From contig NC_091289.1 in assembly GCF_032444005.1 (NCBI RefSeq), forward strand, positions 12,338,001 to 12,402,000: 64,000 nt of DNA, read 5' to 3'. Below, piece by piece: positions 171 through 64,000 of this stretch; position 1 is the stretch's first letter, and the number at the start of each line of letters is the position of its first letter. Below the pieces are notes generated by a model that saw only the letters and a list, made by a program, of their open reading frames with translations, was not told the origin of the DNA and made no database searches. A program made the translations under genes and the position numbers. This DNA comes from Ranitomeya imitator (lineage: Eukaryota).

Positions 171-4677
<4,507 letters not shown>

Positions 4678-5660: not shown

Positions 5661-5944
5661 CCAGAACCAATGGAGCCCTAAAAGCGAGCGCGACCACACA
5701 GGAAATCCCCGGCAGTCACAAGTGCAGGAGATACAAGGTAAAGAATGAAAGAAAGAAGGAAACAATGAAACAAACAGGAAGGAGGAAATCACCTGATCTG
5801 TGTCCCCAGTATAGTGGTGGCTCGCACTGGTTATACTGGGAGATTAACCCTCTGTCACCAGTGACTCAGCTGTAGGCACCATGAGCGGAGAAATACAGGA
5901 TGGAATGTAAACACTGATGGTGCAAATGTCTCCTAGTGTCCCGT

Positions 5945-8140: not shown

Positions 8141-8280
8141 CCTTCCCTGCCCCCCACCTCAGCCCTCTGTGCACCCTCTTATACCGCCTGTATTCGCCCC
8201 GCTTTCCTCTGCTCCCATCGCCGTCTCCAGTGCCTCCTGTGCCCCCTCTCCCGCCCCGCTTCCCTCCTGTGCCCGGTTAC

Positions 8281-8420
8281 CTCTCATGGAGCCGCCCGCA
8301 GTCCGCCGCTCTCGCCCGCTGGTAGCTGCGCTCCTCTGTTTTGGTCTGGCCGCGATCGATGACTCCGCGCTCTGCCAGGATCCCCGCGGGCTGAGCGCCG
8401 AGCGATGGATGGGCGGAGCC
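8281..8420 (-). other. TPRA1: Putative non-coding exon 1 of TPRA1 (5' boundary approximate)
   Basis: CpG-rich island (about 8180-8500) with a donor-like GAG|GTAACC whose GT is at 8280-8279, next to promoter motifs. No transcript evidence. Confidence 0.55.
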
Positions 8421-8443
8421 TGGAGAGCAGTCACGTGACGTGA
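8411..8443. promoter_or_regulatory. TPRA1 proximal promoter motifs: GC box, palindromic E-box/CLEAR GTCACGTGAC, overlapping CRE-like TGACGTGA
   Basis: GGGCGG at 8411-8416, GTCACGTGAC at 8430-8439 and TGACGTGA at 8436-8443, inside a CpG island. Confidence 0.6.
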
Positions 8444-8940
8444 GACTCCGCAGCGCCGCCGGCCGGCCGGACCCGGAGCGTGCGACATTCCGCTGATCTG
8501 TGCGACATTACTGGATCTGTGCAACAGATGTCGAACGTAAAAGTTTAAGTTTAGTTTATTTATATCAGTGTTTTTTTTGTGTCGTCGTTTTCTTCCCTTT
8601 CCGCCGCTGGCCCTGTGTGTGTGTTCCAAGTGTCAGTTTTTATTTTTCTTTAGGGGGAGGAGAGGGTTAAATAGAACTTTTTTTTCTAGCGTTTCCCCGT
8701 CCTGCTACCAGGGATCCGTGTGTGAACCCGGACTACGGGGCGTCGCCACAGAATTTGTTTTTTTTTTTAAAAATAAAGAAATAAACATTGCTGCGTTATT
8801 CATGCGTTTTTTTCTCTGCCAAAATTGCTGCAAAGCATTTAGGGAGGAAAAAAAACAAACAAAAAAAACAAATAAAAATCATATGAGTGAAGCGGAGGGA
8901 GATTCGACCTGCTTAGTTTCCTAGTCCTGACAAAGGGGCG

Positions 8941-43900: not shown

Positions 43901-44114
43901 CTGTTGTTTTTGCTATCAGGAGCTGCATTTTGTGGAGAACGGCTGCCACGATAACCCTACCCTGGACGTGGCTATGGACGGCCAATCCGAAATGCAGGAA
44001 AAGAAGACAAGCCTTAATGGCGGCACCTCTCTCCGGGCTGACGGCTGGGAGACATTGATCAACAAGACAAGCAAAGACGAGACGGACCCCATGGAAGAAG
44101 ACACTCACCTGTAG
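28948..44114 (+). CDS. PODXL2: Podocalyxin-like protein 2 (endoglycan, CD34 family); join(28948-28975, 30134-30427, 32944-33473, 33863-33937, 38229-38385, 39048-39109, 42570-42749, 43920-44114) = 1521 nt, 506 aa
   Basis: Signal peptide [18 protein letters not shown]; [10 protein letters not shown]; GSGF and KYFWDDE motifs; Ser/Thr-rich mucin stalk; Cys-containing globular domain [18 protein letters not shown]; transmembrane helix [25 protein letters not shown]; cytoplasmic [13 protein letters not shown]; PDZ-binding DTHL*. Introns are GT-AG and in phase; the position after MCM2 is syntenic. Confidence 0.93.
29701..29932. mobile_element. TTAA-targeting MITE (T2/Kolobok-like)
   Basis: TTAA|AGGGGTTGTCCCATAAA ... 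TTTATGGAACAACCCCT|TTAA. Confidence 0.85.
30134..30427 (+). CDS. PODXL2: PODXL2 exon 2
   Basis: ccgcag|GG TTC TCC ... ACA G|GTAAA; [24 protein letters not shown]...[25 protein letters not shown]. Confidence 0.93.
30637..32325. repeat. 86-bp repeat as two oppositely oriented arrays (about 3.4 copies + at 30637-30932; about 15.5 copies - at 30984-32325) in PODXL2 intron 2
   Basis: Same unit as 3786-4353; the orientation flips across a spacer of about 50 bp. Confidence 0.95.
32944..33473 (+). CDS. PODXL2: PODXL2 exon 3 (mucin-like stalk)
   Basis: atttcctccacag|AT GGA ... AGC GAG|GTATC; S/T/P-rich; the phase 1 to phase 0 transition fits both neighbouring exons. Confidence 0.85.
33863..33937 (+). 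CDS. PODXL2: PODXL2 exon 4
   Basis: tttccag|GTA ATC TGC ... GAC TGC|GTGAG; [25 protein letters not shown]. Confidence 0.95.
34068..34456. mobile_element. TTAA-targeting MITE (T2/Kolobok-like)
   Basis: TTAA|AAGGGTTTTCCAACTT ... AAAGTGGAAAACCCCT|TTAA. Confidence 0.8.
35560..35635 (+). mobile_element. Truncated hAT MITE left end
   Basis: CAGTGGTCCCCAAC terminus; the internal sequence (CCTCGAGGGC...GATTTCCTTAGTATTGCACAGG) resembles the intact MITE at 20632. No right TIR was found. Confidence 0.65.
35650..37910. repeat. 49/56-bp two-variant tandem array, about 43 copies, in PODXL2 intron 4
   Basis: Unit AGCAGAGCCGG(GAGACGG)GACAGAAACATTGGACAGAGAGGATTCAGGAACGATGT; higher-order periods of 154 bp and 462 bp are visible from identical ORFs. 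Confidence 0.96.
38229..38385 (+). CDS. PODXL2: PODXL2 exon 5
   Basis: tttatag|GAA GAG ... GAG C|GTAAG; [19 protein letters not shown]...[23 protein letters not shown]. Confidence 0.93.
38487..38710. mobile_element. TTAA-targeting MITE (T2/Kolobok-like), diverged
   Basis: TTAA|AGGGGTATGCCC ... GGATATATCCCT|TTAA; internal GGGGTC...GACCCC hairpins. Confidence 0.7.
39048..39109 (+). CDS. PODXL2: PODXL2 exon 6
   Basis: gcacag|GT GTG GTT ... GCA GAG|GTTAG; [20 protein letters not shown]. Confidence 0.93.
40300..41110 (-). pseudogene. Tc1 transposase pseudogene (stops, frameshifts and deletions; lower boundary approximate)
   Basis: ATG at 41110: [27 protein letters not shown]; ...[12 protein letters not shown]...[26 protein letters not shown] (ORF 40728-40955); [16 protein letters not shown] near 40550-40600. 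Confidence 0.88.
41085..41985. repeat. About 28-31-bp minisatellite, about 30 copies, derived from the Tc1 transposase start region
   Basis: Unit TGTTTGGAGATCTCCTTGGTCTTCATGGTGT is the reverse complement of ACACC-ATG-AAG-ACC-AAG-GAG-ATC-TCC-AAA-CA. Confidence 0.93.
42570..42749 (+). CDS. PODXL2: PODXL2 exon 7 (transmembrane)
   Basis: ctacag|ATT GGT ... AAT ATG|GTGAG; [34 protein letters not shown]...[11 protein letters not shown]. Confidence 0.95.
42801..43110. mobile_element. hAT-type MITE, nearly fully palindromic, in PODXL2 intron 7
   Basis: TIRs TAGTGATGAG and CTCATCACTA; 8-bp TSD GTCCTTAG / GTCCTTAT (7 of 8 match); arms of more than 100 bp are near-perfect inverted repeats. Confidence 0.9.
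43113..43860. repeat. 35-bp AT-rich satellite, about 21 copies
   Basis: Unit GCAGTATTATAGTAGTTATATTCTTGTACATAGG(A/G). Confidence 0.96.
43920..44114 (+). CDS. PODXL2: PODXL2 exon 8 (cytoplasmic tail, DTHL)
   Basis: gctatcag|GAG CTG CAT TTT GTG GAG AAC ... CAC CTG TAG; [17 protein letters not shown]...MEEDTHL*. Confidence 0.93.
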   Translation, partial: ELHFVENGCHDNPTLDVAMDGQSEMQEKKTSLNGGTSLRADGWETLINKTSKDETDPMEEDTHL

Positions 44115-44581
44115 AGACTAATGGGGCAGATCCCGGGGGTGAAGCTGAACTCTTGTTTGTTTGTTTTTTTATTGTTGGGCACGTGGGGTTCTAAATGTTT
44201 TCGGTCACTTTCCTGTAAGTAGTTGGGTTGACACTTTGGATTGTTGGCCTGTAGCAGCACAGTATTGTTAGCACACGGTATCGATCGCTGGTGCCCGCAC
44301 TCTCCGTCGCCCTCCGGCCGCTCTCCAGTTTACAACGATCGATATGATTGCACTTTATTCTTCCAAAGATGATATTAGGAGACACTTTCCGGTGCAAATC
44401 TTACCTGCCGGTGCATTCCAGGTCGGCCTCAGCCGTACAGAGTATTGTCGTATTTTTATTTTTCTGCGTGTCGTGATGTAGGACCAGAATTTGTCGCCTC
44501 CTCCACTCGTCCGCTTCCCCATCCCACCCGCATGCATTGTGGATCCTGACAGCTTGACACAATAACAAAAAAAAAAAAACA

Positions 44582-44625
44582 AATAAAAAATCTAATTAAA
44601 AAATATCTTTGATCCAATGAATAAA
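44582..44625 (+). terminator. Candidate PODXL2 polyadenylation signals
   Basis: AATAAA at 44582-44587 and 44620-44625, about 470-510 bp after the stop codon. Not confirmed by any transcript data. Confidence 0.4.
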
Positions 44626-45344
44626 ACAAAATGCGATGGAATATTTCATAAAATGTGGATATCTAAAAACATCAATATACACTGAATATATCCTGTTATA
44701 TGTGCGCCCGGTATAGGAAAGTACTGAAGAAAATGACAGATCTTTGGAATCAGAAGGTGTTTCTATGAGATTAGATGGAACTATATTTTTTTTTTTTAAT
44801 AAGAACAGCTCCACCATCATGAATGTGGCTGTGTTTGGTATTGCAGCTGCAGTAATACCCGACATGACCTGAAAAGAACGGTGGCGCTCTCTTGAGCAGA
44901 AGACCGCTATATTTTGCTAAGTTCATAGAACTCCTTTCCTTCCAGTGTAAAATATGCTCCAGTATTTAGAAATATAGAAATGTGATTATATAAGGGAGAC
45001 AAGATTGTGTATCCAGAGGCCGGGACCCGAGACACGGCCTGAAAAAAAAAGATCTTATAGAGCTCCAATGCTTTACATCAATCCGCGTTTCAGAAGGAAT
45101 AACTGGATGTGACAAGGATCATCTTACTCCTGAGTCCACCATGATTGTCCACGTATCACTCCGGATAAATTATTATTACACACATCCAAAATATATATCA
45201 TTGTAATGGTCCAACACCTGCTGTCAAAACCATGTCCCACCCAACACCCGGACCCTCCAACGTTCCGCTCAACCGGACCAACATCATTATAAAACCAAAA
45301 CTGGAACTACAATAGTACTTACAGAAGTTGTAGTTACATTCTTG

Positions 45345-46658
45345 CACATGAGCAGTATTATAGTAATTATATTCTTGTATATAGGGGCAGTATTATAGTA
45401 ATTATATTCTTGTATATAGGGGCAGTATTATAGTAATTATATTCTTGTACATAGGGAGAAGTATTATAGTAGTTATATTCTTGTACATAGGGGCAGTATT
45501 ATAGTAGTTATATTCTTGTACATAAGAGCAGTATTATAGTAGTTATATTCTTGTATATAGGGGCAGTATTATAGTAGTTATATTCTTGTACATAGGGGCA
45601 GTATTATAGTAGTTATATTCTTGTACATAGGGAGAAGTATTATAGTAGTTATATTCTTGTACATAGGGGCAGTATTATAGTAGTTATATTCTTGTACATA
45701 AGAGCAGTATTATAGTAGTTATATTCTTGTATATAGGGGCAGTATTATAGTAGTTATATTCTTGTATATAGGGGCAGTATTATAGTAATTATATTCTTGT
45801 ATATAGGGGCAATATTATAGTAGTTATATTCTTGTACATAGGGGGCAGTATTATAGTAGTTATATTCTTGTACATAGGGGCAGTATTATAGTAGTTATAT
45901 TCTTGTACATAGGGGCAGTATTATAGTAGTTATATTCTTGTACATAGGGGCAGTATTATAATAGCTATATTCTTGTACATAGGGGCAGTATTATAGTAGT
46001 TATATTCTTGTACATAGGGGCAGTATTATAATAGCTATATTCTTGTACATAGGAGCAGTATTATAGTAGTTATATTCTTGTACATAGGGGCAGTATTATA
46101 GTAGTTATATTCTTGTACATGGGGGCAGTATTATAATAGCTATATTCTTGTACATATGGGCAGTATTATAGTAGTTATATTCTTGTACATAGGGGCAGTA
46201 TTATAGTAGTTATATTCTTGTATATAGGGGCAGTATTATAGTAATTATATTCTTGTATATAGGAGCAGTATTATAGTAGTTATATTCTTGTACATAGGGG
46301 CAGTATTATAGTAGTTATATTCTTGTACATAGGGGCAGTATTATAGTAGTTATATTCTTGTACATAGTAGCAGTATTATAGTAGTTATATTCTTGTACAT
46401 ATGGGCAGTATTATAGTAGTTATATTCTTGTATATAGGAGCAGTATTATAGTAGTTATATTCTTGTACATGGGGGCAGTATTATAGTAGTTATATTCTTG
46501 TACATGGGGGCAGTATTATAGTAGTTATATTCTTGTACATAGGAGCAGCATTATTGTAGTAATATTCTTGTACATAGGAGCAGTATTATAGTAGTTATAT
46601 TCTTGTACATGGGGGCAGTATTATAGTAGTCATATTCTTGTACATAGGAGCAGTACTA
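45345..46658. repeat. 35-bp satellite, about 37 copies (left part of the array interrupted by the Helitron)
   Basis: Same unit as 43113-43860; ends at ...CAGTACTA immediately before the Helitron TC. Confidence 0.96.
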
Positions 46659-49600
46659 TCTATATATATAATTGCCTAAGGGTTTTTCCGTCTGTCTGTC
46701 TGTCTGTCTGTCCTGGAAATCCCGCGTCTCTGAGACCAGCACAGCATCGACGTAGAAATCCCGCGTCTCTGATTGGTCGAGGCCGCCAGTCTGATTGACA
46801 CTTCTATATTGATCAGTCCTCCTGACACTTCTATATTGATCAGTCCTCCTGACACTTCTATATTGATCAGTCCTCCTGACACTTCTGTATTGATCAGTCC
46901 TCCTGACACTTCTATATTGATCAGTCCTCCTGACACTTCTATATTGATCAGTCCTCCTGACACTTCTATATTGATCAGTCCTCCTGACACTTCTATATGG
47001 ATCAGTCCTCCTGACACTTCTATATTGATCAGTCCTCCTGATACCTCTATATTGATCAGTCCTCCTGACACTTCTATATTGATCAGTCCTCCTGACACTT
47101 CTATATTGATCAGTCCTCCTGACACTTCTATATTGATCAGTCCTCCTGACACTTCTATATTGATCAGTCCTCCTGATACCTCTATATTGATCAGTCGTCC
47201 TGACACCTCTATATTGATCAGTCCTCCTGACACTTCTATATTGATCAGTCCTCCTGACACTTCTATATTGATCAGTCCTCCTGACATTCTATATTGATCA
47301 GTCCTCCTGACACTTCTATATTGATCAGTCCTCCTGATACCTCTATATTGATCAGTCCTCCTGACACTTCTATATTGATCAGTCCTCCTGACACTTCTAT
47401 ATTGATCAGTCCTCCTGACACTTCTATATTGATCAGTCCTCCTGACACTTCAATATTGATCAGTCTTCCTGACACTTCAATATTGATCAGTCCTCCTGAC
47501 ACTTCTATATTGATCAGTCCTCCTGACACTTCTATATTGATCAGTCCTCCTGACACTTCAATATTGATCAGTCCTCCTGACACTTCAATATTGATCAGTC
47601 CTCCTGATACCTCTATGGCGGCCTCGACCAATCAGAGACCGGCACAGCATCGACGTAGAAATCCCGCGTCTCTGATTGGGCGAGGCCGCCAGTCTGATTG
47701 ACACTTCTATATTGATCAGTCCTCCTGACACTTCTGTATTGATCAGTCCTCCTGACACTTCTATATTGATCAGTCCTCCTGACACTTCTATATTGATCAG
47801 TCCTCCTGACACTTCTATATTGATCAGTCCTCCTGACACTTCTATATTGATCAGTCCTCCTGACACTTCTATATTGATCAGTCCTCCTGACACTTCTATA
47901 TTGATCAGTCCTCCTGACACCTCTATATTGATCAGTCCTCCTGACACTTCTATATTGATCAGTCCTCCTGACACTTTTATATTGATCAGTCCTCCTGACA
48001 CTTTTATATTGATCAGTCCTCCTGACACTTCTATATTGATCAGTCCTCCTGACACTTCTATATTGATCAGTCCTCCTGATACCTCTATATTGATCAGTCC
48101 TCCTGACACTTCTATATTGATCAGTCCTCCTGACACTTTTATATTGATCAGTCCTCCTGACACTTCTATATTGATCAGTCCTCCTGACACTTCAATATTG
48201 ATCAGTCCTCCTGACACTTCAATATTGATCAGTCCTCCTGACACTTCTATATTGATCAGTCCTCCTGACACTTCTATATTGATCAGTCCTCCTGATACCT
48301 CTATATTGATCAGTCCTCCTGACACTTCTATATTGATCAGTCCTCCTGACACTTCTATATTGATCAGTCCTCCTGACACTTCAATATTGATCAGTCCTCC
48401 TGACACTTCTATATTGATCAGTCCTCCTGACACTTCTATATTGATCAGTCCTCCTGACACTTCTGTATTGATCAGTCCTCCTGACACTTCTATATTGATC
48501 AGTCCTCCTGACACTTCTATATTGATCAGTCCTCCTGACACTTCAATATTGATCAGTCCTCCTGACACTTCTATATTGATCAGTCCTCCTGACACTTCTA
48601 TATTGATCAGTCCTCCTGACACTTCTATATTGATCAGTCCTCCTGACACTTCTATATTGATCAGTCCTCCTGACACTTCAATATTGATCAGTCTTCCTGA
48701 CACTTCTATATTGATCAGTCCTCCTGACACTTCTATATTGATCAGTCCTCCTGACACTTCTATATTGATCAGTCCTCCTGACACTTCTGTATTGATCAGT
48801 CCTCCTGACACTTCTATATTGATCAGTCCTCCTGACACTTCTATATTGATCAGTCCTCCTGACACTTCTATATTGATCAGTCCTCCTGACACTTCTATAT
48901 TGATCAGTCCTCCTGACACTTCTATATTGATCAGTCCTCCTGACACTTCTATATTAATCATTCCTCCTGACACTTCTATATTGATCAGTCCTCCTGACAC
49001 TTCTGTATTGATCAGTCCTCCTGACACTTCTATATTGATAAATCCTCCTGACACTTCTATATTGATCAGTCCTCCTGACGCTTCTATATTGATCAGTCCT
49101 CCTGACACCTCTATATTGATCAGTCCTCCTAACATTCTATATTGATCAGTCCTCCTGACACTTCTATATTGATCAGTCCTCCTGATACATCTATATTGAT
49201 CAGTCCTCCTGACACTTCTATATTGATCAGTCCTCCTGACACTTCTATATTGATCAGTCCTCCTGACACTTCTATATTGATCAGTCCTCCTGATACCTCT
49301 ATATTGATCAGTCCTCCTGACACTTCTATATTGATCAGTCCTCCTAACACTTCTATATTGATCAGTCCTCCTGACACTTCTATATTGATCTGTCCTCCTG
49401 ACATTCTATATTGATCAGTCCTCCTGACACTTCTATATTGATCAGTCCTCCTGACACTTCTATATTGATCTGTCCTCCTGACACTTCTATATTGATCAGT
49501 CCTCCTGACATTCTATATTGATCAGTCCTCCTGACACTTCAATATTGATCAGTCCTCCTGACACTTCTATATTGATCAGTCCTCCTGACACTTCTATATT

Positions 49601-52600
49601 GATCAGTCCTCCTGACACTTCTATATTGATCAGTCCTCCTGACACTTCTATATTGATCAGTCCTCCTGACACTTCAATATTGATCAGTCCTCCTGACACT
49701 TCTATATTGATCAGTCCTCCTGACACTTCTATATTGATCAGTCCTCCTGACATTCTATATTGATCAGTCCTCCTGACACTTCTATATTGATCAGTCCTCC
49801 TGACATTCTATATTGATCAGTCCTCCTGACACTTCTATATTGATCAGTCCTCCTGACATTCCATATTGATCAGTCCTCCTGACATTCTATATTGATCAGT
49901 CCTCCTGACACTTCTATATTGATCAGTCCTCCTGACACTTCTATATTGATCAGTCCTCCTGACACTTCTATATTGATCAGTCCTCCTGACACCTCTATAT
50001 TGATCAGTCCTCCTGACACTTCTATATTGATCAGTCCTCCTGACACTTCTATATTGATCAGTCCTCCTGACACTTCTATATTGATCAGTCCTCCTGACAC
50101 TTCTATATTGATCAGTCCTCCTGACACTTCTATATTGATCAGTCCTCCTGACACTTCTATATTGATCAGTCCTCCTGACACTTCTATATTGATCAGTCCT
50201 CCTGACACTTCTATATTGATCAGTCCTCCTGACACTTCAATATTGATCAGTCCTCCTGACACTTCTATATTGATCAGTCCTCCTGACACTTCTATATTGA
50301 TCAGTCCTCCTGACATTCTATATTGATCAGTCCTCCTGACACTTCTATATTGATCAGTCCTCCTGACATTCTATATTGATCAGTCCTCCTGACACTTCTA
50401 TATTGATCAGTCCTCCTGACATTCCATATTGATCAGTCCTCCTGACATTCTATATTGATCAGTCCTCCTGACACTTCTATATTGATCAGTCCTCCTGACA
50501 CTTCTATATTGATCAGTCCTCCTGACACTTCTATATTGATCAGTCCTCCTGACACTTCTATATTGATCAGTCCTCCTGACACCTCTATATTGATCAGTCC
50601 TCCTGACACTTCTATATTGATCAGTCCTCCTGACACTTCTATATTGATCAGTCCTCCTGACACTTCTATATTGATCAGTCCTCCTGACACTTCTATATTG
50701 ATCAGTCCTCCTGACACTTCTATATTGATCAGTCCTCCTGACACTTCTATATTGATCAGTCCTCCTGACACTTCTATATTGATCAGTCCTCCTGACACTT
50801 CTATATTGATCAGTCCTCCTGACACTTCTATATTGATCAGTCCTCCTGACACTTCTATATTGATCAGTCCTCCTGACACTTCTATATTGATCAGTCCTCC
50901 TGACACTTCTATATTGATCAGTCCTCCTGACACTTCAATATTGATCAGTCCTCCTGACACTTCTATATTGATCAGTCCTCCTGACACTTCTATATTGATC
51001 AGTCCTCCTGACACTTCAATATTGATCAGTCCTCCTGACACTTCAATATTGATCAGTCCTCCTGATACCTCTATGGCGGCCTCGACCAATCAGAGACCGG
51101 CACAGCATCGACGTAGAAATCCCGCGTCTCTGATTGGTCGAGGCCGCCAGTCTGATTGACACTTCTATATTGATCAGTCCTCCTGACACTTCTGTATTGA
51201 TCAGTCCTCCTGACACTTCTATATTGATCAGTCCTCCTGACACTTCTATATTGATCAGTCCTCCTGACACTTCTATATTGATCAGTCCTCCTGACACTTC
51301 TATATTGATCAGTCCTCCTGACACTTCTATATTGATCAGTCCTCCTGACATTCTATATTGATCAGTCCTCCTGACACTTCAATATTGATCAGTCCTCCTG
51401 ACACCTCTATATTGATCAGTCCTCCTGACACTTCTATATTGATCAGTCCTCCTGACACTTTTATATTGATCAGTCCTCCTGACACTTTTATATTGATCAG
51501 TCCTCCTGACACTTCTATATTGATCAGTCCTCCTGACACTTCTATATTGATCAGTCCTCCTGATACCTCTATATTGATCAGTCCTCCTGACACTTCAATA
51601 TTGATCAGTCCTCCTGACACTTCAATATTGATCAGTCCTCCTGACACTTCTATATTGATCAGTCCTCCTGACACTTCTATATTGATCAGTCCTCCTGATA
51701 CCTCTATATTGATCAGTCCTCCTGACACTTCTATATTGATCAGTCCTCCTGACACTTCTATATTGATCAGTCCTCCTGACACTTCAATATTGATCAGTCC
51801 TCCTGACACTTCTATATTGATCAGTCCTCCTGACACTTCTATATTGATCAGTCCTCCTGACACTTCTGTATTGATCAGTCCTCCTGACACTTCTATATTG
51901 ATCAGTCCTCCTGACACTTCTATATTGATCAGTCCTCCTGACACTTCAATATTGATCAGTCCTCCTGACACTTCTATATTGATCAGTCCTCCTGACACTT
52001 CTATATTGATCAGTCCTCCTGACACTTCTATATTGATCAGTCCTCCTGACACTTCTATATTGATCAGTCCTCCTGACACTTCTATATTGATCAGTCCTCC
52101 TGACACTTCAATATTGATCAGTCCTCCTGACACTTCTATATTGATCAGTCCTCCTGACACTTCTATATTGATCAGTCCTCCTGACACTTCTATATTGATC
52201 AGTCCTCCTGACACTTCTGTATTGATCAGTCCTCCTGACACTTCTATATTGATCAGTCCTCCTGACACTTCTATATTGATCAGTCCTCCTGACACTTCTA
52301 TATTGATCAGTCCTCCTGACACTTCAATATTGATCAGTCCTCCTGACACTTCTGTATTGATCAGTCCTCCTGACACTTCTATATTGATCAGTCCTCCTGA
52401 CACTTCTATATTGATCAGTCCTCCTGACACTTCTGTATTGATCAGTCCTCCTGACACTTCTATATTGATCAGTCCTCCTGACACTTCTGTATTGATCAGT
52501 CCTCCTGACACTTCTATATTGATCAGTCCTCCTGACACTTCTATATTGATCAGTCCTCCTGACACTTCAATATTGATCAGTCCTCCTGACACTTCTATAT

Positions 52601-55024
52601 TGATCAGTCCTCCTGACACTTCTATATTGATCAGTCCTCCTGACACTTCTATATTGATCATTCCTCCTGACACTTCTATATTGATCAGTCCTCCTGACGC
52701 TTCTATATTGATCAGTCCTCCTGACACCTCTATATTGATCAGTCCTCCTAACATTCTATATTGATCAGTCCTCCTGACACTTCTATATTGATCAGTCCTC
52801 CTGATACATCTATATTGATCAGTCCTCCTGACACTTCTATATTGATCAGTCCTCCTGACACTTCTATATTGATCTGTCCTCCTGACATTCTATATTGATC
52901 AGTCCTCCTGACACTTCTATATTGATCAGTCCTCCTGACACTTCTATATTGATCTGTCCTCCTGACACTTCTATATTGATCTGTCCTCCTGACACTTCTA
53001 TATTGATCAGTCCTCCTGACATTCTATATTGATCAGTCCTCCTGACACTTCTATATTGATCAGTCCTCCTGACACTTCTATATTGATCAGTCCTCCTGAC
53101 ACTTCTATATTGATCTGTCCTCCTGACACTTCTATATTGATCAGTCCTCCTGACACTTCTATATTGATCAGTCCTCCTGACACTTCAATATTGATCAGTC
53201 CTCCTGACACTTCTATATTGATCAGTCCTCCTGACACTTCTATATTGATCAGTCCTCCTGACACTTCTATATTGATCAGTCCTCCTGACACTTCTATATT
53301 GATCAGTCCTCCTGACACTTCAATATTGATCAGTCCTCCTGACACTTCTATATTGATCAGTCCTCCTGACACTTCTATATTGATCAGTCCTCCTGACATT
53401 CTATATTGATCAGTCCTCCTGACACTTCTATATTGATCAGTCCTCCTGACATTCTATATTGATCAGTCCTCCTGACACTTCTATATTGATCAGTCCTCCT
53501 GACATTCCATATTGATCAGTCCTCCTGACATTCTATATTGATCAGTCCTCCTGACACTTCTATATTGATCAGTCCTCCTGACACTTCTATATTGATCAGT
53601 CCTCCTGACACTTCTATATTGATCAGTCCTCCTGACACTTCTATATTGATCAGTCCTCCTGACACCTCTATATTGATCAGTCCTCCTGACACTTCTATAT
53701 TGATCAGTCCTCCTGACACTTCTATATTGATCAGTCCTCCTGACACTTCTATATTGATCAGTCCTCCTGACACTTCTATATTGATCAGTCCTCCTGACAC
53801 TTCTATATTGATCAGTCCTCCTGACACTTCTATATTGATCAGTCCTCCTGACACTTCTATATTGATCAGTCCTCCTGACACTTCTATATTGATCAGTCCT
53901 CCTGACACTTCAATATTGATCAGTCCTCCTGACACTTCTATATTGATCAGTCCTCCTGACACTTCTATATTGATCAGTCCTCCTGACATTCTATATTGAT
54001 CAGTCCTCCTGACACTTCTATATTGATCAGTCCTCCTGACATTCTATATTGATCAGTCCTCCTGACACTTCTATATTGATCAGTCCTCCTGACATTCCAT
54101 ATTGATCAGTCCTCCTGACACTTCTATATTGATCAGTCCTCCTGACACTTCTATATTGATCAGTCCTCCTGACACTTCTATATTGATCAGTCCTCCTGAC
54201 ACTTCTATATTGATCAGTCCTCCTGACACCTCTATATTGATCAGTCCTCCTGACACTTCTATATTGATCAGTCCTCCTGACACTTCTATATTGATCAGTC
54301 CTCCTGACACTTCTATATTGATCAGTCCTCCTGACACTTCTATATTGACCAGTCCTCCTGACACTTCTATATTGATCAGTCCTCCTGACACTTCTATATT
54401 GATCAGTCCTCCTGACACTTCTATATTGATCAGTCCTCCTGACACTTCTATATTGATCAGTCCTCCTGACACTTCTATATTGATCAGTCCTCCTGACACT
54501 TCTATATTGATCAGTCCTCCTGACACTTGACGATGATGTCATAAAGGACGTAGATATCCCGCGTCTCTGATTCAGCGACGGGCACAGTATCGACGTAGAT
54601 GTCATAATTGTTGCCATGGCGACGATGATGTCATAAAGGTTGCCTCAACCAATCAGCGACGAGCACAGTCTGCCGCGAATTCTGGAATCATCATTGTCCA
54701 TATACTACGGGGACATGCATGTTCTAGAATACCCGATGCGTTAGAATCCTGGAAATCCCGCGTCTCTGATTGGTCTGATTGTCCTGGAAATCCCGCGTCT
54801 CTGATTGGTCGAGGCCTAGCGGCCTCGACCAATCAATCAGCAACGGGCACAGCGACGATGATGTCATAATGGTTGCCATGGCGACGATGATGTCATAAAG
54901 GTTGCCTCGACCAATCAGCGACGGGCACAGTCTGCCGCGAATTCTGGAATCATCATTGTCCATATACTACAGGGACATGCATATTCTAGAATACCCGATG
55001 CTTTAGAATCGGGCCCCAATCTAG
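46659..55024 (+). mobile_element. Non-autonomous Helitron (8,366 bp) with an internal 27-bp tandem array
   Basis: 5' end TCTATATAT; 3' hairpin CCCGAT-N8-ATCGGG (54994-55013) then CTAG (55021-55024); inserted between A and T with no TSD; the flanks rejoin into an intact satellite unit. No RepHel ORF. Confidence 0.88.
46798..54527. repeat. 27-bp tandem array, roughly 280 copies, inside the Helitron
   Basis: Unit GACACTTCTATATTGATCAGTCCTCCT (26-bp variants break the frame); interrupted by 74-bp palindromes at 47617-47690 and 51075-51148. Confidence 0.98.
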
Positions 55025-58000
55025 TAGTAGATATATTCTTGTACATAGGAGCAGTATTATAGTAGTTATATTCTTGTACATAGGGGCAGTATTATAGTAG
55101 TTATATTCTTGTACATAGGAGCAGTATTATAGTAGTTATATGCTTGTACATAGGGGCAGTATTATAGTAGTTATATTCTTGTACATAGGAGCAGTATTAT
55201 AGTAGTTATATTCTTGTACATAGGGGCAGTATTATAGTAGTTATATTCTTGTACATAGGAGCAGTATTATAGTAGTTATATTCTTGTACATAGGAGCAGT
55301 ATTATAGTAGTTATATTCTTGTACGTAGGAGCAGTATTATAGTAGTAATATTCTTGTACATAGGAGCAGTATTATAGTAGTTATATTCTTGTACATAGGG
55401 GCAGTATTATAGTAGTTATATTCTTGTACATAGGAGCAGTATTATAGTAGTTATTATCTTGTACATAGGGGCAGTATTATAGTAGTTATATTCTTGTATA
55501 TAGGAGCAGTATTATAGTAGTTATATTCTTGTACATAGGAGCAGTATTATAGTAGTTATATTCTTGTACATGGGGGCAGTATTATAGTAGTTATATTTTG
55601 TACATAGGAGCAGTATTATAGTAGTTATATTCTTGTACATGGGGGCAGTATTATAGTAGTTATATTCTTGTACATGGGGGCAGTATTATAGTAGTTATAT
55701 TCTTGTACATAGGAGCAGTATTATAGTAGTTATATTCTTGTACATAGGGGCAGTATTATAGTAGTTATATTCTTGTACATAGGAGCAGTATTATAGCAGA
55801 TATATTCTTTTACATATGAGCAGTATTATAGTAGTTATATTCTTGTATATTGGAGCAGTATTATAGTAGTTATATTCTTGTACATAGGGAGCAGTATTAT
55901 AATGGTTGTATTCTTGTACATGAGGCAGTATTATATTAGTTATATTCTTGTACATAGGGGCAGTATTATAGTAGTTATTGTATATAGGGGCAGTACTATA
56001 GTAGTTACATTCTTGTACATAGGGGCAGTATTATAGTAGTTATATTCTTGTACATAGGGAGCAGTATTATAGTAATTATATTCTTGTACATAGGGGCAGT
56101 ATTATAGTAGTTATATTCTTGTACGTAGGAGCAGTATTATAGCAGATATATTCTTTTACATATGAGCAGTATTATAGTAGTTATATTCTTGTATATTGGA
56201 GCAGTATTATAGTAGTTATATTCTTGTACATAGGGAGCAGTATTATAATAGTTGTATTCTTGTACATGAGGCAGTATTATATTAGTTATATTCTTGTACA
56301 TAGGGGCAGTATTATAGTAGTTATATTCTTGTACATAGGAGCAGTATTATAGTAGTTATATTCTTGTATGTAGGGGCAGTATTATAGTAGTTATTGATTA
56401 TTTGGGCAGTACTATAGTAGTTACATTCTTGTACATAGGGGGCAGTATTATAGTAGTTATATTCTTGTATGTAGGGGCAGTATTATAGTAGTTATTGTAT
56501 ATAGGGGCAGTACTATACTAGTTACATTCTTGTACATAGGGGCAGTATTATAGTAGTTATATTCTTGTACATAGGAGCAGTATTATAGTAGTTATATTCT
56601 TGTATGTAGGGGCAGTATTATAGTATTTATTGTATATTTGGGCAGTACTATAGTAGTTACATTCTTGTACATAGGGGGCAGTATTATAGTAGCTATATTC
56701 TTGTACATAGGGGCCGTATTATAGTAGCTATACTCTTGTACATAGGGGCAGTATTATAGTAGTTAGATTCTTGTACATTGGAGCAGTATTATAGTAGTTA
56801 TATTCCTGTACATAGGAGCAGTATTATAGTAGGTATATTCTTGTACATAGGAGTAGTATTATAGTAGTTATATTAAGTTATATTCCTTACATAGGAGCAG
56901 TATTATAGTAGTTATATTCTTGTACATAGAAGGCAGTATTATAGTAGTTATATTCTTGTAAATAGGGAGCAGTTTTATAGTAGCTATATTCCTGTACATA
57001 GAAGGCAGTATTATAGTAGTTATATTCCTGTACATAGGAGGCAGTATTATAGTAGTTATATTCTTGTACATAGGGAACAGTATTATAGTAGTTATATTCT
57101 TGTACATAGGAGGCAGTATTATAGTAGTTATATTCTTGTACATAGGGGACAGTATTATAGTAGTTATATTCTTGTACATAGGAGGCAGTATTATAGTAGT
57201 TATATTCTTGTGCATAGAGGACAGTATTATAGTAGTTATATTCTTGTACATAGAGGCAGTATTATAGTAGTTATATTCTTGTACATAGGAGCAGTATTAT
57301 AGTAGTTATATTCCTGTACATAAGAGCAGTATTATAGTAGTTATATTCCTGTACATAGGAGCAATATTATAGTAGTTATATTCTTGTACATGGGGGCAGT
57401 ATTATAGTAGTTATATTCTTGTACATAGGAGCAGTATTATAGTAGTTATATTCTTGTACATGGGGGCAGTATTATAGTAGTTATATTCTTGTACATGGGG
57501 GCAGTATTATAGTAGTTATATTCTTGTACATAGGAGCAGTATTATAGTAGTTGTATTCTTGTACATAGGGGCAGTATTATAGTAGTTATATTCTTGTACA
57601 TAGGAGCAGTATTATAGCAGATATATTCTTTTACATATGAGCAGTATTATAGTAGTTATATTCTTGTATATTGGAGCAGTATTATAGTAGTTATATTCTT
57701 GTACATAGGGAGCAGTATTATAATAGTTGTATTCTTGTACATGAGGCAGTATTATATTAGTTATATTCTTGTACATAGGGGCAGTATTATAGTAGTTATT
57801 GTATATAGGGGCAGTACTATAGTAGTTACATTCTTGTACATAGGGGCAGTATTATAGTAGTTATATTCTTGTACATAGGGAGCAGTATTATAGTAATTAT
57901 ATTCTTGTACATAGGGGCAGTATTATAGTAGTTATATTCTTGTACATAGGAGCAGTATTATAGCAGATATATTCTTTTACATATGAGCAGTATTATAGTA

Positions 58001-61000
58001 GTTATATTCTTGTATATTGGAGCAGTATTATAGTAGTTATATTCTTGTACATAGGGAGCAGTATTATAATAGTTGTATTCTTGTACATGAGGCAGTATTA
58101 TATTGGTCATATTCTTGTACATAGGGGCAGTATTATAGTAGTTATATTCTTGTACATAGGAGCAGTATTATAGTAGTTATATTCTTGTATGTAGGGGCAG
58201 TATTATAGTAGTTATTGTATATTTGGGCAGCACTATAGTAGTTACATTCTTGTACATAGGGGGCAGTATTATAGTAGCTATATTCTTGTACATAGGGGCA
58301 GTATTATAGTAGCTATACTCTTGTACATAGGGGCAGTATTATAGTAGTTAGATTCTTGTACATTGGAGCAGTATTATAGTAGTTATATTCCTGTACATAG
58401 GAGCAGTATTATAGTAGCTATATTCTTGTATATAGGAGTAGTATTATAGTAGTTATATTCCTGTACATAGGAGGCAGTATTATAGTAGTTATATTCTTGT
58501 ACAAAGGGGACAGTATTATAGTAGTTGTATTCTTGTACATAGGAGGCAGTATTATAGTAGTTATATTCTTGTACATAGGGGACAGTATTATAGTAGTTAT
58601 ATTCTTGTACATAGGAGGCAGTATTATAGTAGTTATTGTATATTTGGGCAGTACTATAGTAGTTACATTCTTGTACATAGGGGGCAGTATTATAGTAGCT
58701 ATATTCTTGTACATAGGGGCAGTATTATAGTAGCTATACTCTTGTACATAGGGGCAGTATTATAGTAGTTAGATTCTTGTACATTGGAGCAGTATTATAG
58801 TAGTTATATTCCTGTACATAGGAGCAGTATTATAGTAGCTATATTCTTGTACATAGGAGTAGTATTATAGTAGTTATATTAAGTTATATTCCTGTACATA
58901 GGAGCAGTATTATAGTAGTTATATTCTTGTACATAGAAGGCAGTATTATAGTAGTTATATTCTTGTAAATAGGGAGCAGTATTATAGTAGCTATATTCCT
59001 GTACATAGAAGGCAGTATTATAGTAGTCATATTCCTGTACATAGGAGGCAGTATTATAGTAGTTATATTCTTGTACAAAGGGGACAGTATTATAGTAGTT
59101 GTATTCTTGTACATAGGAGGCAGTATTATAGTAGTTATATTCTTTTACATAGGGGACAGTATTATAGTAGTTATATTCTTGTACATAGGAGGCAGTATTA
59201 TAGTAGTTATATTCTTGTACATAGGGGGCAGTATTATAGTAGTTATATTCTTGTACATAGAGGCAGTATTATAGTAGTTATATTCTTGTACATAGGAGCA
59301 GTATTATAGTAGTTATATTCCTGTACATAAGAGCAGTATTATAGTAGTTATATTCCTGTACATAGGAGCAGTATAATAGTGGTTATATTCTTGCACATAG
59401 GAGCAGTATAATAGTAGTTATATTTTCGTACATAGGGAGCAGTATTATAGTAAATATATTCTTGTACATAGCGGCAGTATTATAGTAGTTATATTCTTGT
59501 ACATAGGAGCAGCATTATAGTAGTTATATTCTTGTACATAGGGGGCAGTATTATAGTAGTTATATTCTTGTACATAGAGGCAGTATTATAGTAGTTATAT
59601 TCCTGTACATAGGGGCAGTATTATAGTAGTTATATTCTTGTACATAGGGGGCAGTATTATAGTAGTTATATTCTTGTACATAGAGGCAGTATTATAGTAG
59701 TTATATTCTTGTACATAGGAGCAGTATTATAGTAGTTATATTCCTGTACATAGGAGCAGTATAATAGTGGTTATATTCTTGTACATAGAGGCAGTATTAT
59801 AGTAGTTATATTCCTGTACATAGGGGCAGTATTATAGTAGTTATATTCTTGTACATAGGGGGCAGTATTATAGTAGTTATATTCTTGTACATAGAGGCAG
59901 TATTATAGTAGTTATATTCTTGTACATAGGAGCAGTATTATAGTAGTTATATTCCTGTACATAAGAGCAGTATTATAGTAGTTATATTCCTGTACATAGG
60001 AGCAGTATTATAGTAGTTATATTCTTGTACATAGGGGGCAGTATTATAGTAGTTATATTCTTGTACATAGAGGCAGTATTATAGTAGTTATATTCTTGTA
60101 CATAGGAGCAGTATTATAGTAGTTATATTCTTGTACATAGGAGCAGTATTATAGTAGCTATATTCCTGTACATAGGAGACAGTATTATAGTAGTTATATT
60201 CTTGTACATGGGGGCAGTATTATAGTAGTTATATTCTTGTACATAGGAACAGTATTATAGTAGTTATATTCTTGTACATAGGGGCAGTATTATAGTAGTT
60301 ATATTCCTGTACATAGGGGCAGTATTATAGTAGTTATATTCTTGTACATGGGGGCAGTATTATAGTAGTTATATTATTGTACATAGGAGCAGTATTATAG
60401 TAGCTATATTCCTGTACATAGGAGACAGTATTATAGTAGTTATATTCTTGTACATGGGGGCAGTATTATAGTAGTTATATTCCTGTACATAGGAACAGTA
60501 TTATAGTAGTTATATTCTTGTACATAGGGGCAGTATTATAGTAGTTATATTCCTGTACATAGGGGCAGTATTATAGTAGTTATATTCTTGTACATGGGGG
60601 CAGTATTATAGTAGTTATATTATTGTACATAGGAGCAGTATTATAGTAGTTATATTCTTGTACATAGGAGCAGTATTATAGTAGTTATATTCTTGTACAT
60701 AGGAGCAGTATTATAGTAGCTATATTCCTGTACATAGGAGACAGTATTATAGTAGTTATATTCTTGTACATGGGAGCAGTATTATAGTAGCTATATTCTT
60801 GTACATAGGAGTAGTATTATAGTAGTTATATTAAGTTATATTCCTGTACATAGGAGCAGTATTATAGTAGTTATATTCTTGTACATAGAAGGCAGTATTA
60901 TAGTAGTTATATTCTTGTAAATAGGGAGCAGTATTATAGTAGCTATATTCCTGTACATAGAAGGCAGTATTATAGTAGTTATATTCCTGTACATAGGAGG

Positions 61001-64000
61001 CAGTATTATAGTAGTTATATTCTTGTACATAGGGGACAGTATTATAGTAGTTATATTCTTGTACATAGGAGGCAGTATTATAGTAGTTATATTCTTGTAC
61101 ATAGGGGACAGTATTATAGTAGTTATATTCTTGTACATAGGAGGAAGTATTATAGTAGTTATATTCTTGTACATAGGGGACAGTATTATTGTAGTTATAT
61201 TCTTGTACATAGGGGGCAGTATTATAGTAGTTATATTTTTGTACATAGAGGCAGTATTATAGTAGTTATATTCTTGTACATAGGAGCAGTATTATAGTAG
61301 TTATATTCCTGTACATAAGAGCAGTATTATTGTAGTTATATTCCTGTACATAGGAGCAGTATAATAGTGGTTATATTCTTGCACATAGGAGCAGAATAAT
61401 AGTAGTTATATTTTCGTACATAGGGAGCAGTATTATAGTAATTATATTCTTGTACATAGCGGCAGTATTATAGTAGTTATATTCTTGTACATAGGAGCAG
61501 TATTATAGTAGTTATATTCTTGTACATAGGGGGCAGTATTATAGTAGTTATATTCTTGTACATAGAGGCAGTATTATAGTAGTTATATTCCTGTACATAG
61601 GGGCAGTATTATAGTAGTTATATTCTTGTACATAGGGGCAGTATTATAGTAGTTATATTCTTGTACATAGAGGCAGTATTATAGTAGTTATATTCTTGTA
61701 CATAGGAGCAGTATTATAGTAGTTATATTCTTGTACATAGGAGCAGTATTATAGTAGCTATATTCCTGTACATAGGAGACAGTATTATAGTAGTTATATT
61801 CTTGTACATGGGGGCAGTATTATAGTAGTTATATTCTTGTACATAGGGGCAGTATTATAGTAGTTATATTCCTGTACATAGGAGCAGTATTATAGTAGTT
61901 ATATTCTTGTACATAGGAGCAGTATTATAGTAGCTATATTCCTGTACATAGGAGACAGTATTATAGTAGTTATATTCTTGTACATGGGGGCAGTATTATA
62001 GTAGTTATATTCTTGTACATAGGAGGAGTATTATAGTAGTTATATTCTTGTACATAGGGGCAGTATTATAGTAGTTATATTCCTGTACATAGGGGCAGTA
62101 TTATAGTAGTTATATTCTTGTACATGGGGGCAGTATTATAGTAGTTATATTCTTGTACATAGGAGCAGTATTATAGTAGTTATATTCTTGTACATAGGAG
62201 CAGTATTATAGTAGTTATATTCTTGTACATAGGAGCAGTATTATAGTAGCTATATTCCTGTACATAGGAGACAGTATTATAGTAGTTATATTCTTGTACA
62301 TGGGGGCAGTATTATAGTAGTTATATTCTTGTACATAGGAGCAGTATTATAGTAGTTATATTCTTGTTCATAGGAGACAGTATTATAGTAGTTATATTCT
62401 TGTACATGGGGGCAGTATTATAGTAGTAATATTCTTGTACATAGGAGACAGTATTATAGTAGTTATATTCTTGTTCATAGGGGCAGTATTATAGTAGTTA
62501 TATTCCTGTACATAGGGGCAGTATTATAGTAGTTATATTCTTGTACATGGGGGCAGTATTATAGTAGTTATATTCTTGTACATAGGGGCAGTATTATAGT
62601 AGTTATATTCCTGTACATAGGGGCAGTATTATAGTAGTTATATTCCTGTACATAGGAGCAGTATTATAGTAGTTATATTCTTGTACATAGGAACAGTATT
62701 ATAGTAGTTATATTCTTGTACATAGGAACAGTATTATAGTAGTTATATTCTTGTACATAGGAGCAGTATTATAGTAGTTATATTCTTGTACATAGGAGCA
62801 GTATTATAGTAGCTATATTCCTGTACATAGGAGACAGTATTATAGTAGTTATATTCTTGTACATGGGGGCAGTATTATAGTAGTTATATTCTTGTACATA
62901 GGAACAGTATTATAGTAGTTATATTCTTGTACATAGGGGCAGTATTATAGTAGTTATATTCTTGTACATAGGAGCAGTATTATAGTAGTTATATTCTTGT
63001 ACATAGGAGCAGTATTATAGTAGCTATATTCCTGTACATAGGAGACAGTATTATAGTAGTTATATTCTTGTACATGGGGGCAGTATTATAGTAGTTATAT
63101 TCTTGTACATAGGAGCAGTATTATAGTAGTTATATTCTTGTACATAGGAGCAGTATTATAGTAGTTATATTCTTGTACATAGGGGCAGTATTATAGTAGT
63201 TATATTCCTGTACATAGGGGCAGTATTATAGTAGTTATATTCTTGTACATGGGGGCAGTATTATAGTAGTTATATTCTTGTACATAGGAGCAGTATTATA
63301 GTAGTTATATTCTTGTACATAGGAGCAGTATTATAGTAGTTATATTCTTGTACATAGGAGCAGTATTATAGTAGCTATATTCCTGTACATAGGAGACAGT
63401 ATTATAGTAGTTATATTCTTGTACATGGGGGCAGTATTATAGTAGTTATATTCTTGTACATAGGAGCAGTATTATAGTAGTTATATTCTTGTACATAGGG
63501 GCAGTATTATAGTAGTTATATTCCTGTACATAGGGGCAGTATTATAGTAGTTATATTCTTGTACATGGGGGCAGTATTATAGTAGTTATATTCTTGTACA
63601 TAGGAGCAGTATTATAGTAGTTATATTCTTGTACATAGGAGCAGTATTATAGTAGTTATATTCTTGTACATAGGAGCAGTATTATAGTAGCTATATTCCT
63701 GTACATAGGAGACAGTATTATAGTAGTTATATTCTTGTACATGGGGGCAGTATTATAGTAGTTATATTCTTGTACATAGGAGCAGTATTATAGTAGTTAT
63801 ATTCTTGTTCATAGGGGCAGTATTATAGTAGTTATATTCCTGTACATGGGGGCAGTATTATAGTAGTTATATTCTTGTACATGGGGGCAGTATTATAGTA
63901 GTTATATTCTTGTACATAGGGGCAGTATTATAGTAGTTATATTCCTGTACATAGGGGCAGTATTATAGTAGTTATATTCCTGTACATAGGAGCAGTATTA
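55025..64000. repeat. 35-bp satellite, about 255 copies, runs off the right edge
   Basis: Same unit; higher-order duplicated blocks carry shared variants (e.g. near 56860, 58870 and 60820). Confidence 0.98.

What the first reader, a model, noticed from the sequence alone, without database searches (positions are those of the whole stretch)
46659..55024. 8.4-kb Helitron with exact ends, inserted in one satellite and filled with another
Seen in sequence: the element starts TC and ends with a 6-bp-stem hairpin (CCCGAT-GCTTTAGA-ATCGGG) 7 nt before CTAG. Removing it joins CAGTACTA + TAGTAGATATATTCTTGTACATAGG into one intact 35-bp satellite unit, so it inserted at A^T with no target-site duplication. 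Established: these are the diagnostic Helitron features, and Helitrons are known to carry internal tandem arrays. About 92% of the element is a 27-bp array and it has no RepHel ORF. Inference: this is a non-autonomous Helitron that carries and spreads the 27-bp satellite. An ORF or repeat track would show it only as two adjacent satellites.
Basis: partly seen in the sequence, partly recalled or inferred. Interest (0 to 1): 0.8.

Follow-up and report, generated by a model that had tools for sequence, protein, structure and literature searches.

The report
Satellite-carrying Helitron inside another satellite
This 8.4-kb stretch is a real non-coding rolling-circle transposon (Helitron) filled with a 27-bp repeat, an ordinary kind of element; the less ordinary part is that its family has repeatedly landed at one exact spot of the surrounding 35-bp satellite.

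Summary
Window 46659-55024 starts with TC and ends with a CCCGAT/ATCGGG hairpin, 7 nt, then CTAG. Removing it restores one 35-bp satellite unit, so it inserted at A^T with no duplication.

It belongs to a young family of canonical Helitrons:
- The genome holds about 12,000 exact 3' ends.
- All 50 sampled 3' ends are followed by T, and 48 of 51 sampled 5' ends are preceded by A, with unrelated flanks.
- An 8.0-kb autonomous partner encodes an intact 1874-aa Rep/helicase. It shares the first ~20 nt and last ~40 nt, including the hairpin.

Ordinary family members are 280-620 bp and lack the 27-mer. A subfamily has the array in place of an internal segment. Its array-to-tail junction recurs at 113 sites on ten chromosomes, so the array is copied along with the element.

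The window copy has a chimeric tail that is unique in the genome.

New here: Helitron 5' ends join the 35-bp satellite at one of its five A^T sites in 99 of 100 listed cases. Reverse-oriented copies use a different site. A tree forces at least five independent insertions.

Helitrons carrying minisatellites are already known, in frogs as well. Other first-reader notes on this genome, unchecked, mention similar elements elsewhere.

The parts
45330..46658 (.). Left flank: 35-bp satellite (about 38 units), ending ...gcagtacta
   Evidence: TRF; sequence
46659..46795 (+). Helitron 5' leader: left terminal sequence TCTATATATATAATTGCCTAAGGGTTTTTCC, a (CTGT)n run, and a palindromic CCAAT-box module
   Evidence: Same 5' end at 30 or more loci with unrelated upstream flanks. 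The first ~20 nt are shared with the autonomous element.
46796..47616 (+). 27-bp array, block 1 (30 units of TGACACTTCTATATTGATCAGTCCTCC)
   Evidence: TRF
47617..47698 (+). 82-bp spacer 1, a copy of the leader's palindromic module (GGCGGCCTCGACCAATCAGAGACC...GTCTCTGATTGG.CGAGGCCGCC)
47699..51074 (+). 27-bp array, block 2 (125 units)
   Evidence: TRF. It is 97% identical to block 3, but no better in register than out of register.
51075..51156 (+). 82-bp spacer 2
51157..54528 (+). 27-bp array, block 3 (125 units)
   Evidence: TRF
54529..54748 (+). Tail A: a normal family 3' region whose terminal hairpin is cut after ...CCCGATGCGTTAGAATC, so it lacks GGGCCACAATCTAG
   Evidence: Alignment with short copies. 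The array-to-tail junction is shared by 113 genomic sites.
54749..55024 (+). Tail B: a second family member lacking its first ~54 nt. It supplies the working 3' terminus. The A/B junction is unique in the genome.
54994..55013 (+). 3' subterminal hairpin CCCGAT-GCTTTAGA-ATCGGG
   Evidence: Fold. It is conserved in 50 sampled copies and in the autonomous element.
55021..55024 (+). 3' terminal CTAG, followed by T of the target
55025..64000 (.). Right flank: 35-bp satellite (about 255 units, running to the window end), starting tagtagatatattc
   Evidence: TRF; sequence

Best explanation
Window 46659-55024 is a non-autonomous canonical Helitron (HLE1).

What it is (shown). It belongs to a young family with about 12,000 or more copies. 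Ordinary members are 280-620 bp. A subfamily has a 27-bp minisatellite, interrupted by 82-bp spacers copied from the element's own palindromic module, in place of about 30 nt of internal sequence.

How it moves (inferred from established Helitron biology). It encodes nothing. It is moved in trans by the RepHel protein of the ~8-kb autonomous family that shares its terminal ~20 nt (5') and ~40 nt (3', including the hairpin). The protein nicks at A|TC, peels one strand off up to the hairpin-CTAG stop signal, and pastes it between A and T of a target without duplication. Whatever lies between the two ends is copied along with them, so the 27-bp array travels to new loci. Its length then changes by slippage or unequal exchange.

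Where it landed (shown). This copy sits at GCAGTAyTA^TAGTAG of a 35-bp satellite, a position the family has used many times independently.

Its 3' part (shown as structure; the order of events is inferred). It is a fusion of two family members. The first has lost its stop signal, so the unit now ends at the second element's terminus.
For: - Ends and empty site.
- Family boundaries: 50 of 50 3' ends are CTAG (or CTAA) followed by T, with diverse flanks. 5' ends are preceded by A in 48 of 51. Complete copies show no duplication. There are no terminal inverted repeats.
- Copy number: 12,001 exact 3' ends.
- Autonomous partner: L071 1263-9256. Its 1874-aa ORF carries Helitron_like_N, PIF1 and Pif1_2B, and its termini match. 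The genome has more than 1,266 Rep candidates, many of them open frames of 1874 aa. Sampled copies are 98.9-100% identical.
- Array inheritance: short copies lack the 27-mer. The array-to-tail junction occurs 113 times on C1-C10. The unit-2 A-to-G variant is shared at array starts in 12 or more loci. Nine different 5' flanks and four different 3' flanks were seen for array-bearing copies. The window holds 108 of the 14,078 exact 27-mer dimers, which fits roughly 110-130 arrays of this size. All four of the first C1 arrays have a same-strand 3' end 0.3-1 kb downstream.
- Hot spot.
Against: - No direct evidence of movement is available: no polymorphic empty allele, no circles, no excision.
- The chimeric tail junction is found nowhere else. 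The 8.4-kb unit may therefore be the product of two insertions plus a deletion in place, rather than one transposition.
- The four array loci listed first on C1 are not among the 113 junction hits. More than one junction type therefore exists, and the total count and history of array-bearing copies are incomplete.
- Some array-bearing copies lie in local tandem clusters (C1:832.64-832.66 Mb). Part of the spread is therefore local duplication, not transposition.
- No source was found for the 27-mer.
Confidence: 0.88

Rival explanations
1. A short Helitron of about 400 bp inserted here, and the 27-bp array then arose and grew in place. On this view the element does not spread the satellite, and arrays elsewhere are independent expansions.
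For: Array length differs greatly between copies: 4 units in L034, 30 and 125 units here, and several kb elsewhere. Arrays clearly do change in place. Blocks 2 and 3 are not collinear duplicates.
Against: Ordinary copies have no 27-mer seed to expand from. The same left and right junctions recur at more than 100 dispersed sites, and the same unit-2 variant at 12 or more loci. That indicates one origin followed by copying.
Confidence: 0.05
2. The many Helitron/35-bp-satellite junctions at one monomer position come from a single old insertion. That insertion was then amplified and dispersed together with the satellite as part of a higher-order repeat. On this view there was no repeated site-specific insertion.
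For: Several junctions lie 0.6-4 kb apart in the same array. Some neighbouring pairs share a rare flanking monomer variant, for example C2:839259828/839261975 and C3:809446142/809448930. Local co-amplification therefore does occur and inflates the counts.
Against: - Ten sampled copies on eight chromosomes differ in length (346-621 bp, one array-bearing, one over 1.1 kb) and in 5' subtype.
- In a tree of 53 copies the eight satellite-embedded ones are scattered among the others. The tree needs 8 changes, well-supported branches force at least 5, and three embedded copies are well-supported sisters of non-satellite copies.
- The flanking monomers carry the common variants in roughly the proportions seen in the satellite.
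- Reverse-oriented copies sit at a different site.
Confidence: 0.1
3. The 8.4-kb unit is two events, not one element. An array-bearing Helitron inserted first. A second copy then landed head-to-tail at its 3' end, and a deletion of about 68 bp fused them in place.
For: The internal junction ...TTAGAATC|CTGGAAATCCC is unique in the genome. Head-to-tail pairs (CTAG|TCTATATA) are common in this family. L072 shows a similar damaged-hairpin fusion at another locus.
Against: Nothing excludes it. It changes only the order of events. The outer ends, the family membership and the carried array stay the same. The alternative, a fusion in a donor copy followed by read-through transposition, would need a donor that is now lost or unassembled.
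Confidence: 0.45
4. There is no mobile element here. Two unrelated satellites simply abut, and the TC, CTAG and hairpin are coincidences.
For: TC and CTAG are short, and the hairpin alone is only marginally stable (z -1.97).
Against: The 137-nt leader and the 200-nt tail recur genome-wide as paired ends of short elements with unrelated flanks, and they match an autonomous RepHel element.
Confidence: 0.01

Closest known systems
Heli2Xen non-autonomous Helitrons of Xenopus (PMC12001565)
   Same: These are frog Helitrons whose non-autonomous copies consist mostly of an internal minisatellite that varies between copies. They have far more non-autonomous copies than autonomous ones.
   Different: Heli2Xen belongs to the Helitron2/HLE2 group and has a 166-bp unit. 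The element here is a canonical HLE1 (TC...CTAG, A^T) with a 27-bp unit and 82-bp spacers. Only a small subfamily carries the array (113 or more of about 12,000 copies).
Heli1Xen1, a canonical Helitron family spread among amphibians and other vertebrates (PMC12001565)
   Same: It is also HLE1: it starts with TC, ends with CTAG, has a TA-rich left end and a 3' hairpin, and has abundant miniature non-autonomous copies in anurans.
   Different: Its reported hairpin is CCCGTTA...TAACGGG and its left-end motif is TATATAAA. Here the hairpin is CCCGAT...ATCGGG and the left end is TCTATATATATAATTG. Whether the proteins are related was not tested.
Cg_HINE Helentron-derived elements of the Pacific oyster (PMC7492417) and DINE-1 of Drosophila (PMC4067079)
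   Same: These are non-autonomous rolling-circle elements that carry satellite-like arrays in their middle and scatter them through the genome.
   Different: They are Helentrons (HLE2), with short terminal inverted repeats, T^T insertion and endonuclease-encoding partners. None of these features is present here.
Helraiser / Helibat
   Same: It supplies the mechanistic model used here: a 5' nick, a 3' hairpin plus CTAG stop signal, read-through when the stop signal is damaged (which produces chimeras), and an AT target without duplication.
   Different: As I recall, Helraiser needs only an AT dinucleotide in AT-rich DNA. The family here uses one particular A^T of a 35-bp monomer, and a different one in the opposite orientation.

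Membership tests
Canonical Helitron (HLE1; definition as in PMC11417382) | 5' end starts with TC | tested here: met
   46659-46660 is TC. The same start, TCTATATATATAATTG, is found at 30 or more loci.
Canonical Helitron (HLE1) | 3' end is CTRR | tested here: met
   CTAG at 55021-55024. Of 50 sampled ends, 48 are CTAG and 2 are CTAA.
Canonical Helitron (HLE1) | Short hairpin just upstream of the 3' end | tested here: met
   It has a 6-bp stem and an 8-nt loop and ends 11 nt from the terminus. The stem is conserved in the family and in the autonomous element, while the loop varies.
Canonical Helitron (HLE1) | Insertion between A and T without target-site duplication | tested here: met
   The satellite unit is restored exactly. 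Ten further satellite insertions restore it as well. Position -1 is A in 48 of 51 flanks and +1 is T in 47 of 48. No duplication is seen in 19 complete copies.
Canonical Helitron (HLE1) | No terminal inverted repeats | tested here: met
   The best local match of the 5' 80 nt to the reverse complement of the 3' 80 nt scores 6, against a shuffle mean of 7.5.
Canonical Helitron (HLE1) | Termini shared with a RepHel-encoding autonomous element in the same genome | tested here: met
   L071 1263-9256 carries an 1874-aa ORF with Helitron_like_N (E 2e-63), PIF1 (E 4e-57) and Pif1_2B. Its first ~20 nt and last ~40 nt match.
Canonical Helitron (HLE1) | Demonstrated mobility (polymorphic insertion, excision or circular intermediate) | not testable with these tools
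   The only DNA runs found come from one sample, probably the assembly's own source. Read laying is limited to 6 kb and the element is 8.4 kb.
Helentron / Helitron2 (HLE2) | Short terminal inverted repeats, insertion between T and T, often an endonuclease domain in the partner | tested here: not met
   There are no inverted repeats. The target is A^T. The partner has only Rep and Pif1 helicase domains.
Satellite-carrying non-autonomous rolling-circle element | The same internal tandem array, with the same junctions to element sequence, at many dispersed loci between element ends | tested here: met
   The right junction occurs 113 times on ten chromosomes. The left junction and the unit-2 variant are shared. 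3' ends lie downstream of arrays in 4 of 4 cases.

The most novel reading that the evidence does not exclude
This family's RepHel may choose its target by much more than the AT dinucleotide. It would read a strand-specific context of about 10-20 nt, so that one position of the 35-bp satellite monomer (GCAGTATTA^TAGTAG in one orientation, AAGAATA^TAACTAC in the other) acts as a landing pad, as do fixed positions of at least three other minisatellites. That would be a sequence-specific canonical Helitron in a vertebrate. It would also be a route by which one satellite is repeatedly seeded inside another.
Probability: 0.5. Interest if true: 0.6.

Novelty: new member of a known kind. Interest (0 to 1): 0.42.

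Why it matters
The element itself is a textbook case and adds a well-delimited, probably still active Helitron family to a large genome. The family has autonomous copies about 99.3% identical with intact ORFs, about 12,000 short copies, and a subfamily that has scattered roughly 1 Mb of a 27-bp repeat over all large chromosomes. Annotation pipelines would report the locus only as two tandem repeats.

The more useful result is the target choice. About 200 junctions sit at one of five possible A^T sites of a satellite monomer, the preferred site depends on strand, and at least five of these insertions are independent events. This gives a natural, countable readout of how a Helitron picks its target, a step that is poorly understood. 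A transposition assay with the intact RepHel could test it.

Tried and rejected
Only small pieces could be taken, so no second complete array-bearing copy with both flanks was read.
- Source of the 27-mer: BLAST against the autonomous element, short copies and this copy's leader and tail gave only chance 8-9-mers. The unit's ends (CAGTCCTC......ATCAG) resemble the replaced Helitron segment CAGGCCTCGACCAATCAG, but this is too weak to claim.
- Blocks 2 and 3 as a recent duplication: rejected. In-register identity (97.1%) is no better than identity shifted by one unit (97.5%).
- Explaining the hot spot by the family's general target preference: a position weight matrix built from 51 and 48 non-satellite flanks scores another site of the monomer higher (1.7 against 0.99). 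It therefore does not explain the choice.
- Sibling copies of the chimeric tail: none found.
- Empty-site allele or expression: run names are coded, the only clear DNA holders are one sample, and the other holders look like transcript data for the neighbouring exon. Read laying was not used, because its 6-kb limit cannot span the 8.4-kb element and reads from thousands of other satellite copies would mimic an empty site.
- Pfam on the array ORFs: only low-complexity noise.
- Literature: four searches found no report of a Helitron with a fixed insertion position in a satellite monomer. The library is incomplete, so this is not proof of novelty.
Full report
**1. The observation**

- A at 46658 is followed by TCTATATATATAATTGCCTAAGGG....
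- At the other end, CCCGAT (54994-54999), an 8-nt loop and ATCGGG (55008-55013) are followed by CCCCAAT, then CTAG (55021-55024), then T.
- Joining the flanks (gcagtacta + tagtagatatattcttgtacatagg) gives one satellite unit of the right length and phase.

TRF shows the 35-bp satellite on both sides (45330-46658 and 55025 to the window end). It shows a 27-bp array in three blocks inside the element. The blocks are separated by two 82-bp spacers that repeat a palindromic module of the element's own leader.

The arrays make up 90.5% of the 8,366 bp, or 92.4% with the spacers. There are no N's. The long ORFs in the element arise because 27 bp equals nine codons. They encode LISPPDTSI repeats and have no genuine domain.

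**2. It is a member of a large Helitron family**

- The 137-nt leader and the 200-nt tail both recur across the 5.96-Gb genome.
- In the fetched loci the 5' end always begins at the same base, with unrelated sequence upstream.
- All 50 sampled 3' ends stop at CTAG (two at CTAA) and are followed by T and then unrelated sequence.
- Among flanks that are neither satellite nor another Helitron, position -1 is A in 48 of 51 and +1 is T in 47 of 48. About a quarter lie in (TA)n.
- Complete copies show no duplication of the target.
- The two ends are not inverted repeats.
- An exact 23-nt 3'-end word occurs 12,001 times.
- Head-to-tail pairs (CTAG|TCTATATA) are frequent.
- The 3' 190 nt of sampled copies are 96% identical in the median.

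**3. The autonomous partner**

Pfam's Helitron_like_N finds more than 1,266 candidates, many within open frames of up to 1874 aa.

One copy was read in full (L071). The element spans 1263-9256 (7,994 bp) and sits directly after another copy's CTAG. Its ORF at 2027-7648 has Helitron_like_N, PIF1 and Pif1_2B domains and no endonuclease.

Its first ~20 nt (TCTA-ATATATAATTGCCTA) and last ~40 nt, including CCCGAT...ATCGGG...CTAG, match the window element. The interior does not match.

Eleven sampled Rep regions are 98.9-100% identical. The family is therefore young and probably still active.

By the published definition of HLE1 (PMC11417382), every structural criterion is met.

**4. What the 27-bp array is**

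Ordinary members are 283-621 bp and contain no 27-mer. In the window copy the array, introduced by TCTGAT, takes the place of the segment GC-CTCGACCAATCAGCAACGGGCACA-GC, between GGCCGCCAG and GACGATGATGTCATAAAGG.

Evidence that the array is inherited by copying:
- The array-to-tail junction occurs 113 times (97 exact) on C1-C10.
- Array starts after a leader or spacer carry the same A-to-G variant in unit 2 at 12 or more loci.
- Array-bearing copies have at least nine different 5' flanks and four different 3' flanks.
- Exact 27-mer dimers number 14,078, of which this copy holds 108. That implies roughly 1 Mb of array in about 110-130 window-sized equivalents, close to the junction count.
- The four arrays listed first on C1 each have a same-strand Helitron 3' end 0.3-1 kb downstream.

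The array therefore arose once in a subfamily and has been copied with it. Array length then drifts: 4 units in L034, 30 and 125 units here, and tandem clusters of 3.5-4 kb units at C1:832.6 Mb. No source of the 27-mer was found.

**5. The tail of this copy**

Tail A (54529-54748) is a normal family 3' region, but it stops inside the hairpin after ...TTAGAATC. Tail B (54749-55024) is a second member lacking its first ~54 nt. It provides the intact hairpin and CTAG.

This is what one expects if a head-to-tail pair lost the inner stop and start signals. The fusion junction is unique in the genome. I cannot say whether the fusion happened in a donor copy, with the whole 8.4 kb then moving, or at this site after two insertions. 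L072 shows a comparable damaged-hairpin fusion elsewhere.

**6. The position in the 35-bp satellite is a hot spot**

- L074 on C3 shows an array-bearing copy ending CTAG|tagtagtt, followed 14 units later by another Helitron starting after gcagtatta.
- Genome-wide...GGNGCAGTATTA|TCTATATATATAATTG occurs 212 times with up to 2 mismatches.
- A phase-free search (TTCTTGTACA, 0-30 nt, then the 5' end) gives 121 hits. Of the 100 listed, 99 are at this one of the monomer's five A^T sites. The other TA^TA site has no exact hit.
- In the opposite orientation there are 22 hits, 16 of them at a different site, AAGAATA^TAAC.
- Ten sampled insertions on eight chromosomes all restore the monomer exactly. They differ in length (346-621 bp, one array-bearing, one longer than 1.1 kb) and in 5' subtype.
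- In a maximum-likelihood tree of 53 short copies, the eight satellite-embedded ones are scattered. The tree needs eight changes, well-supported branches force at least five, and three embedded copies are well-supported sisters of non-satellite copies.
- A simple weight matrix built from other insertions does not predict the chosen site.

The satellite has 155,593 exact monomers. About 30% of the window's units are exact. That implies roughly half a million units, or about 0.3% of the genome. My rough estimate is that about 1.6% of family copies lie in it.

Some junction pairs are clearly local duplicates, so the counts overstate the number of events.

The family also sits at fixed positions of at least three other minisatellites.

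**7. Comparison with what is known**

Non-autonomous rolling-circle elements that consist mostly of an internal minisatellite are established:
- Heli2Xen in Xenopus (PMC12001565)
- oyster Cg_HINE (PMC7492417)
- DINE-1 in Drosophila (PMC4067079)

Canonical TC...CTAG Helitrons with miniature copies are also known in anurans (Heli1Xen1, PMC12001565).

Four literature searches gave no report of a Helitron with a fixed, strand-dependent insertion position in a satellite monomer. The library is incomplete.

Other first-reader notes on this genome mention Helitrons with expanded internal satellites on other pieces. I did not examine those windows.

**8. Verdict**

- Observation: confirmed.
- Interpretation: supported, with the refinements above.
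- Interest: moderate. It rests mainly on the target-site result, which needs a genome-wide tally and an assay.

Noticed in passing
window 43115-43866, 43867-45329 and 45330-46658: The same 35-bp satellite lies on both sides of what looks like a terminal coding exon plus 3' UTR (coding sequence ending near 44113, AATAAA near 44620). The last exon of a gene is therefore embedded in the satellite, and the Helitron sits about 2 kb downstream of the gene's end.
   Followed up: partly
window 56820-56918, 58826-58925, 60778-60877: Variant units of 44-45 bp recur about every 1.95-2.0 kb in the 35-bp array, which suggests a higher-order repeat of about 56 units.
   Followed up: no
L009, L016, L042, L043, L047, L057 (flanks); also L046, L075, L015: The same Helitron family sits at one fixed position of other minisatellites. 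One has a ~38-bp unit, TATACTATATACAGGRGGAGATGACACACAGGTA, hit at ...CAGGTA^TATACT in 6 of about 60 sampled loci. Another has a ~30-bp unit, TACTGTATAATGGCCACACATGATGCTCCA. A third is a repeat hit at ...ATAGCCACA^TAGTATATAA.
   Followed up: partly
G000:C3:833532059-833554425 (parts in L026, L027, L074): This may be a 22-kb array-bearing copy. A 5' end in the 35-bp satellite at C3:833532059 and a 3' end at about C3:833554425 have 27-bp arrays and spacers at every point sampled between them. The continuity was not verified.
   Followed up: no
G000:C1:832643746-832658220 (L012, L015, L018, L024): There is a tandem cluster of array-bearing Helitrons with a period of 3.5-4.1 kb. Some units have the array fused to position ~10 of the next 5' end (TCCTCCTGA|TAATTGCCTAAGGG). 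This may be a step from a dispersed element towards a true higher-order satellite.
   Followed up: partly
window 46720-46790, 47617-47698, 54560-54930: The non-array parts of the element are built from repeated CCAAT-box-like modules (GACCAATCAGCGACGGGCACAG and its inverse CTGATTGGTCGAGGCC), arranged as palindromes. This looks like promoter or NF-Y-site sequence, but its function was not examined.
   Followed up: no
L071 277-337 of the 1874-aa ORF: The autonomous element's protein has a weak N-terminal match to STPR repeats (E 8e-4, below the Pfam cut-off). An earlier first-reader note on this genome mentions a Helitron carrying an STPR-like gene.
   Followed up: no
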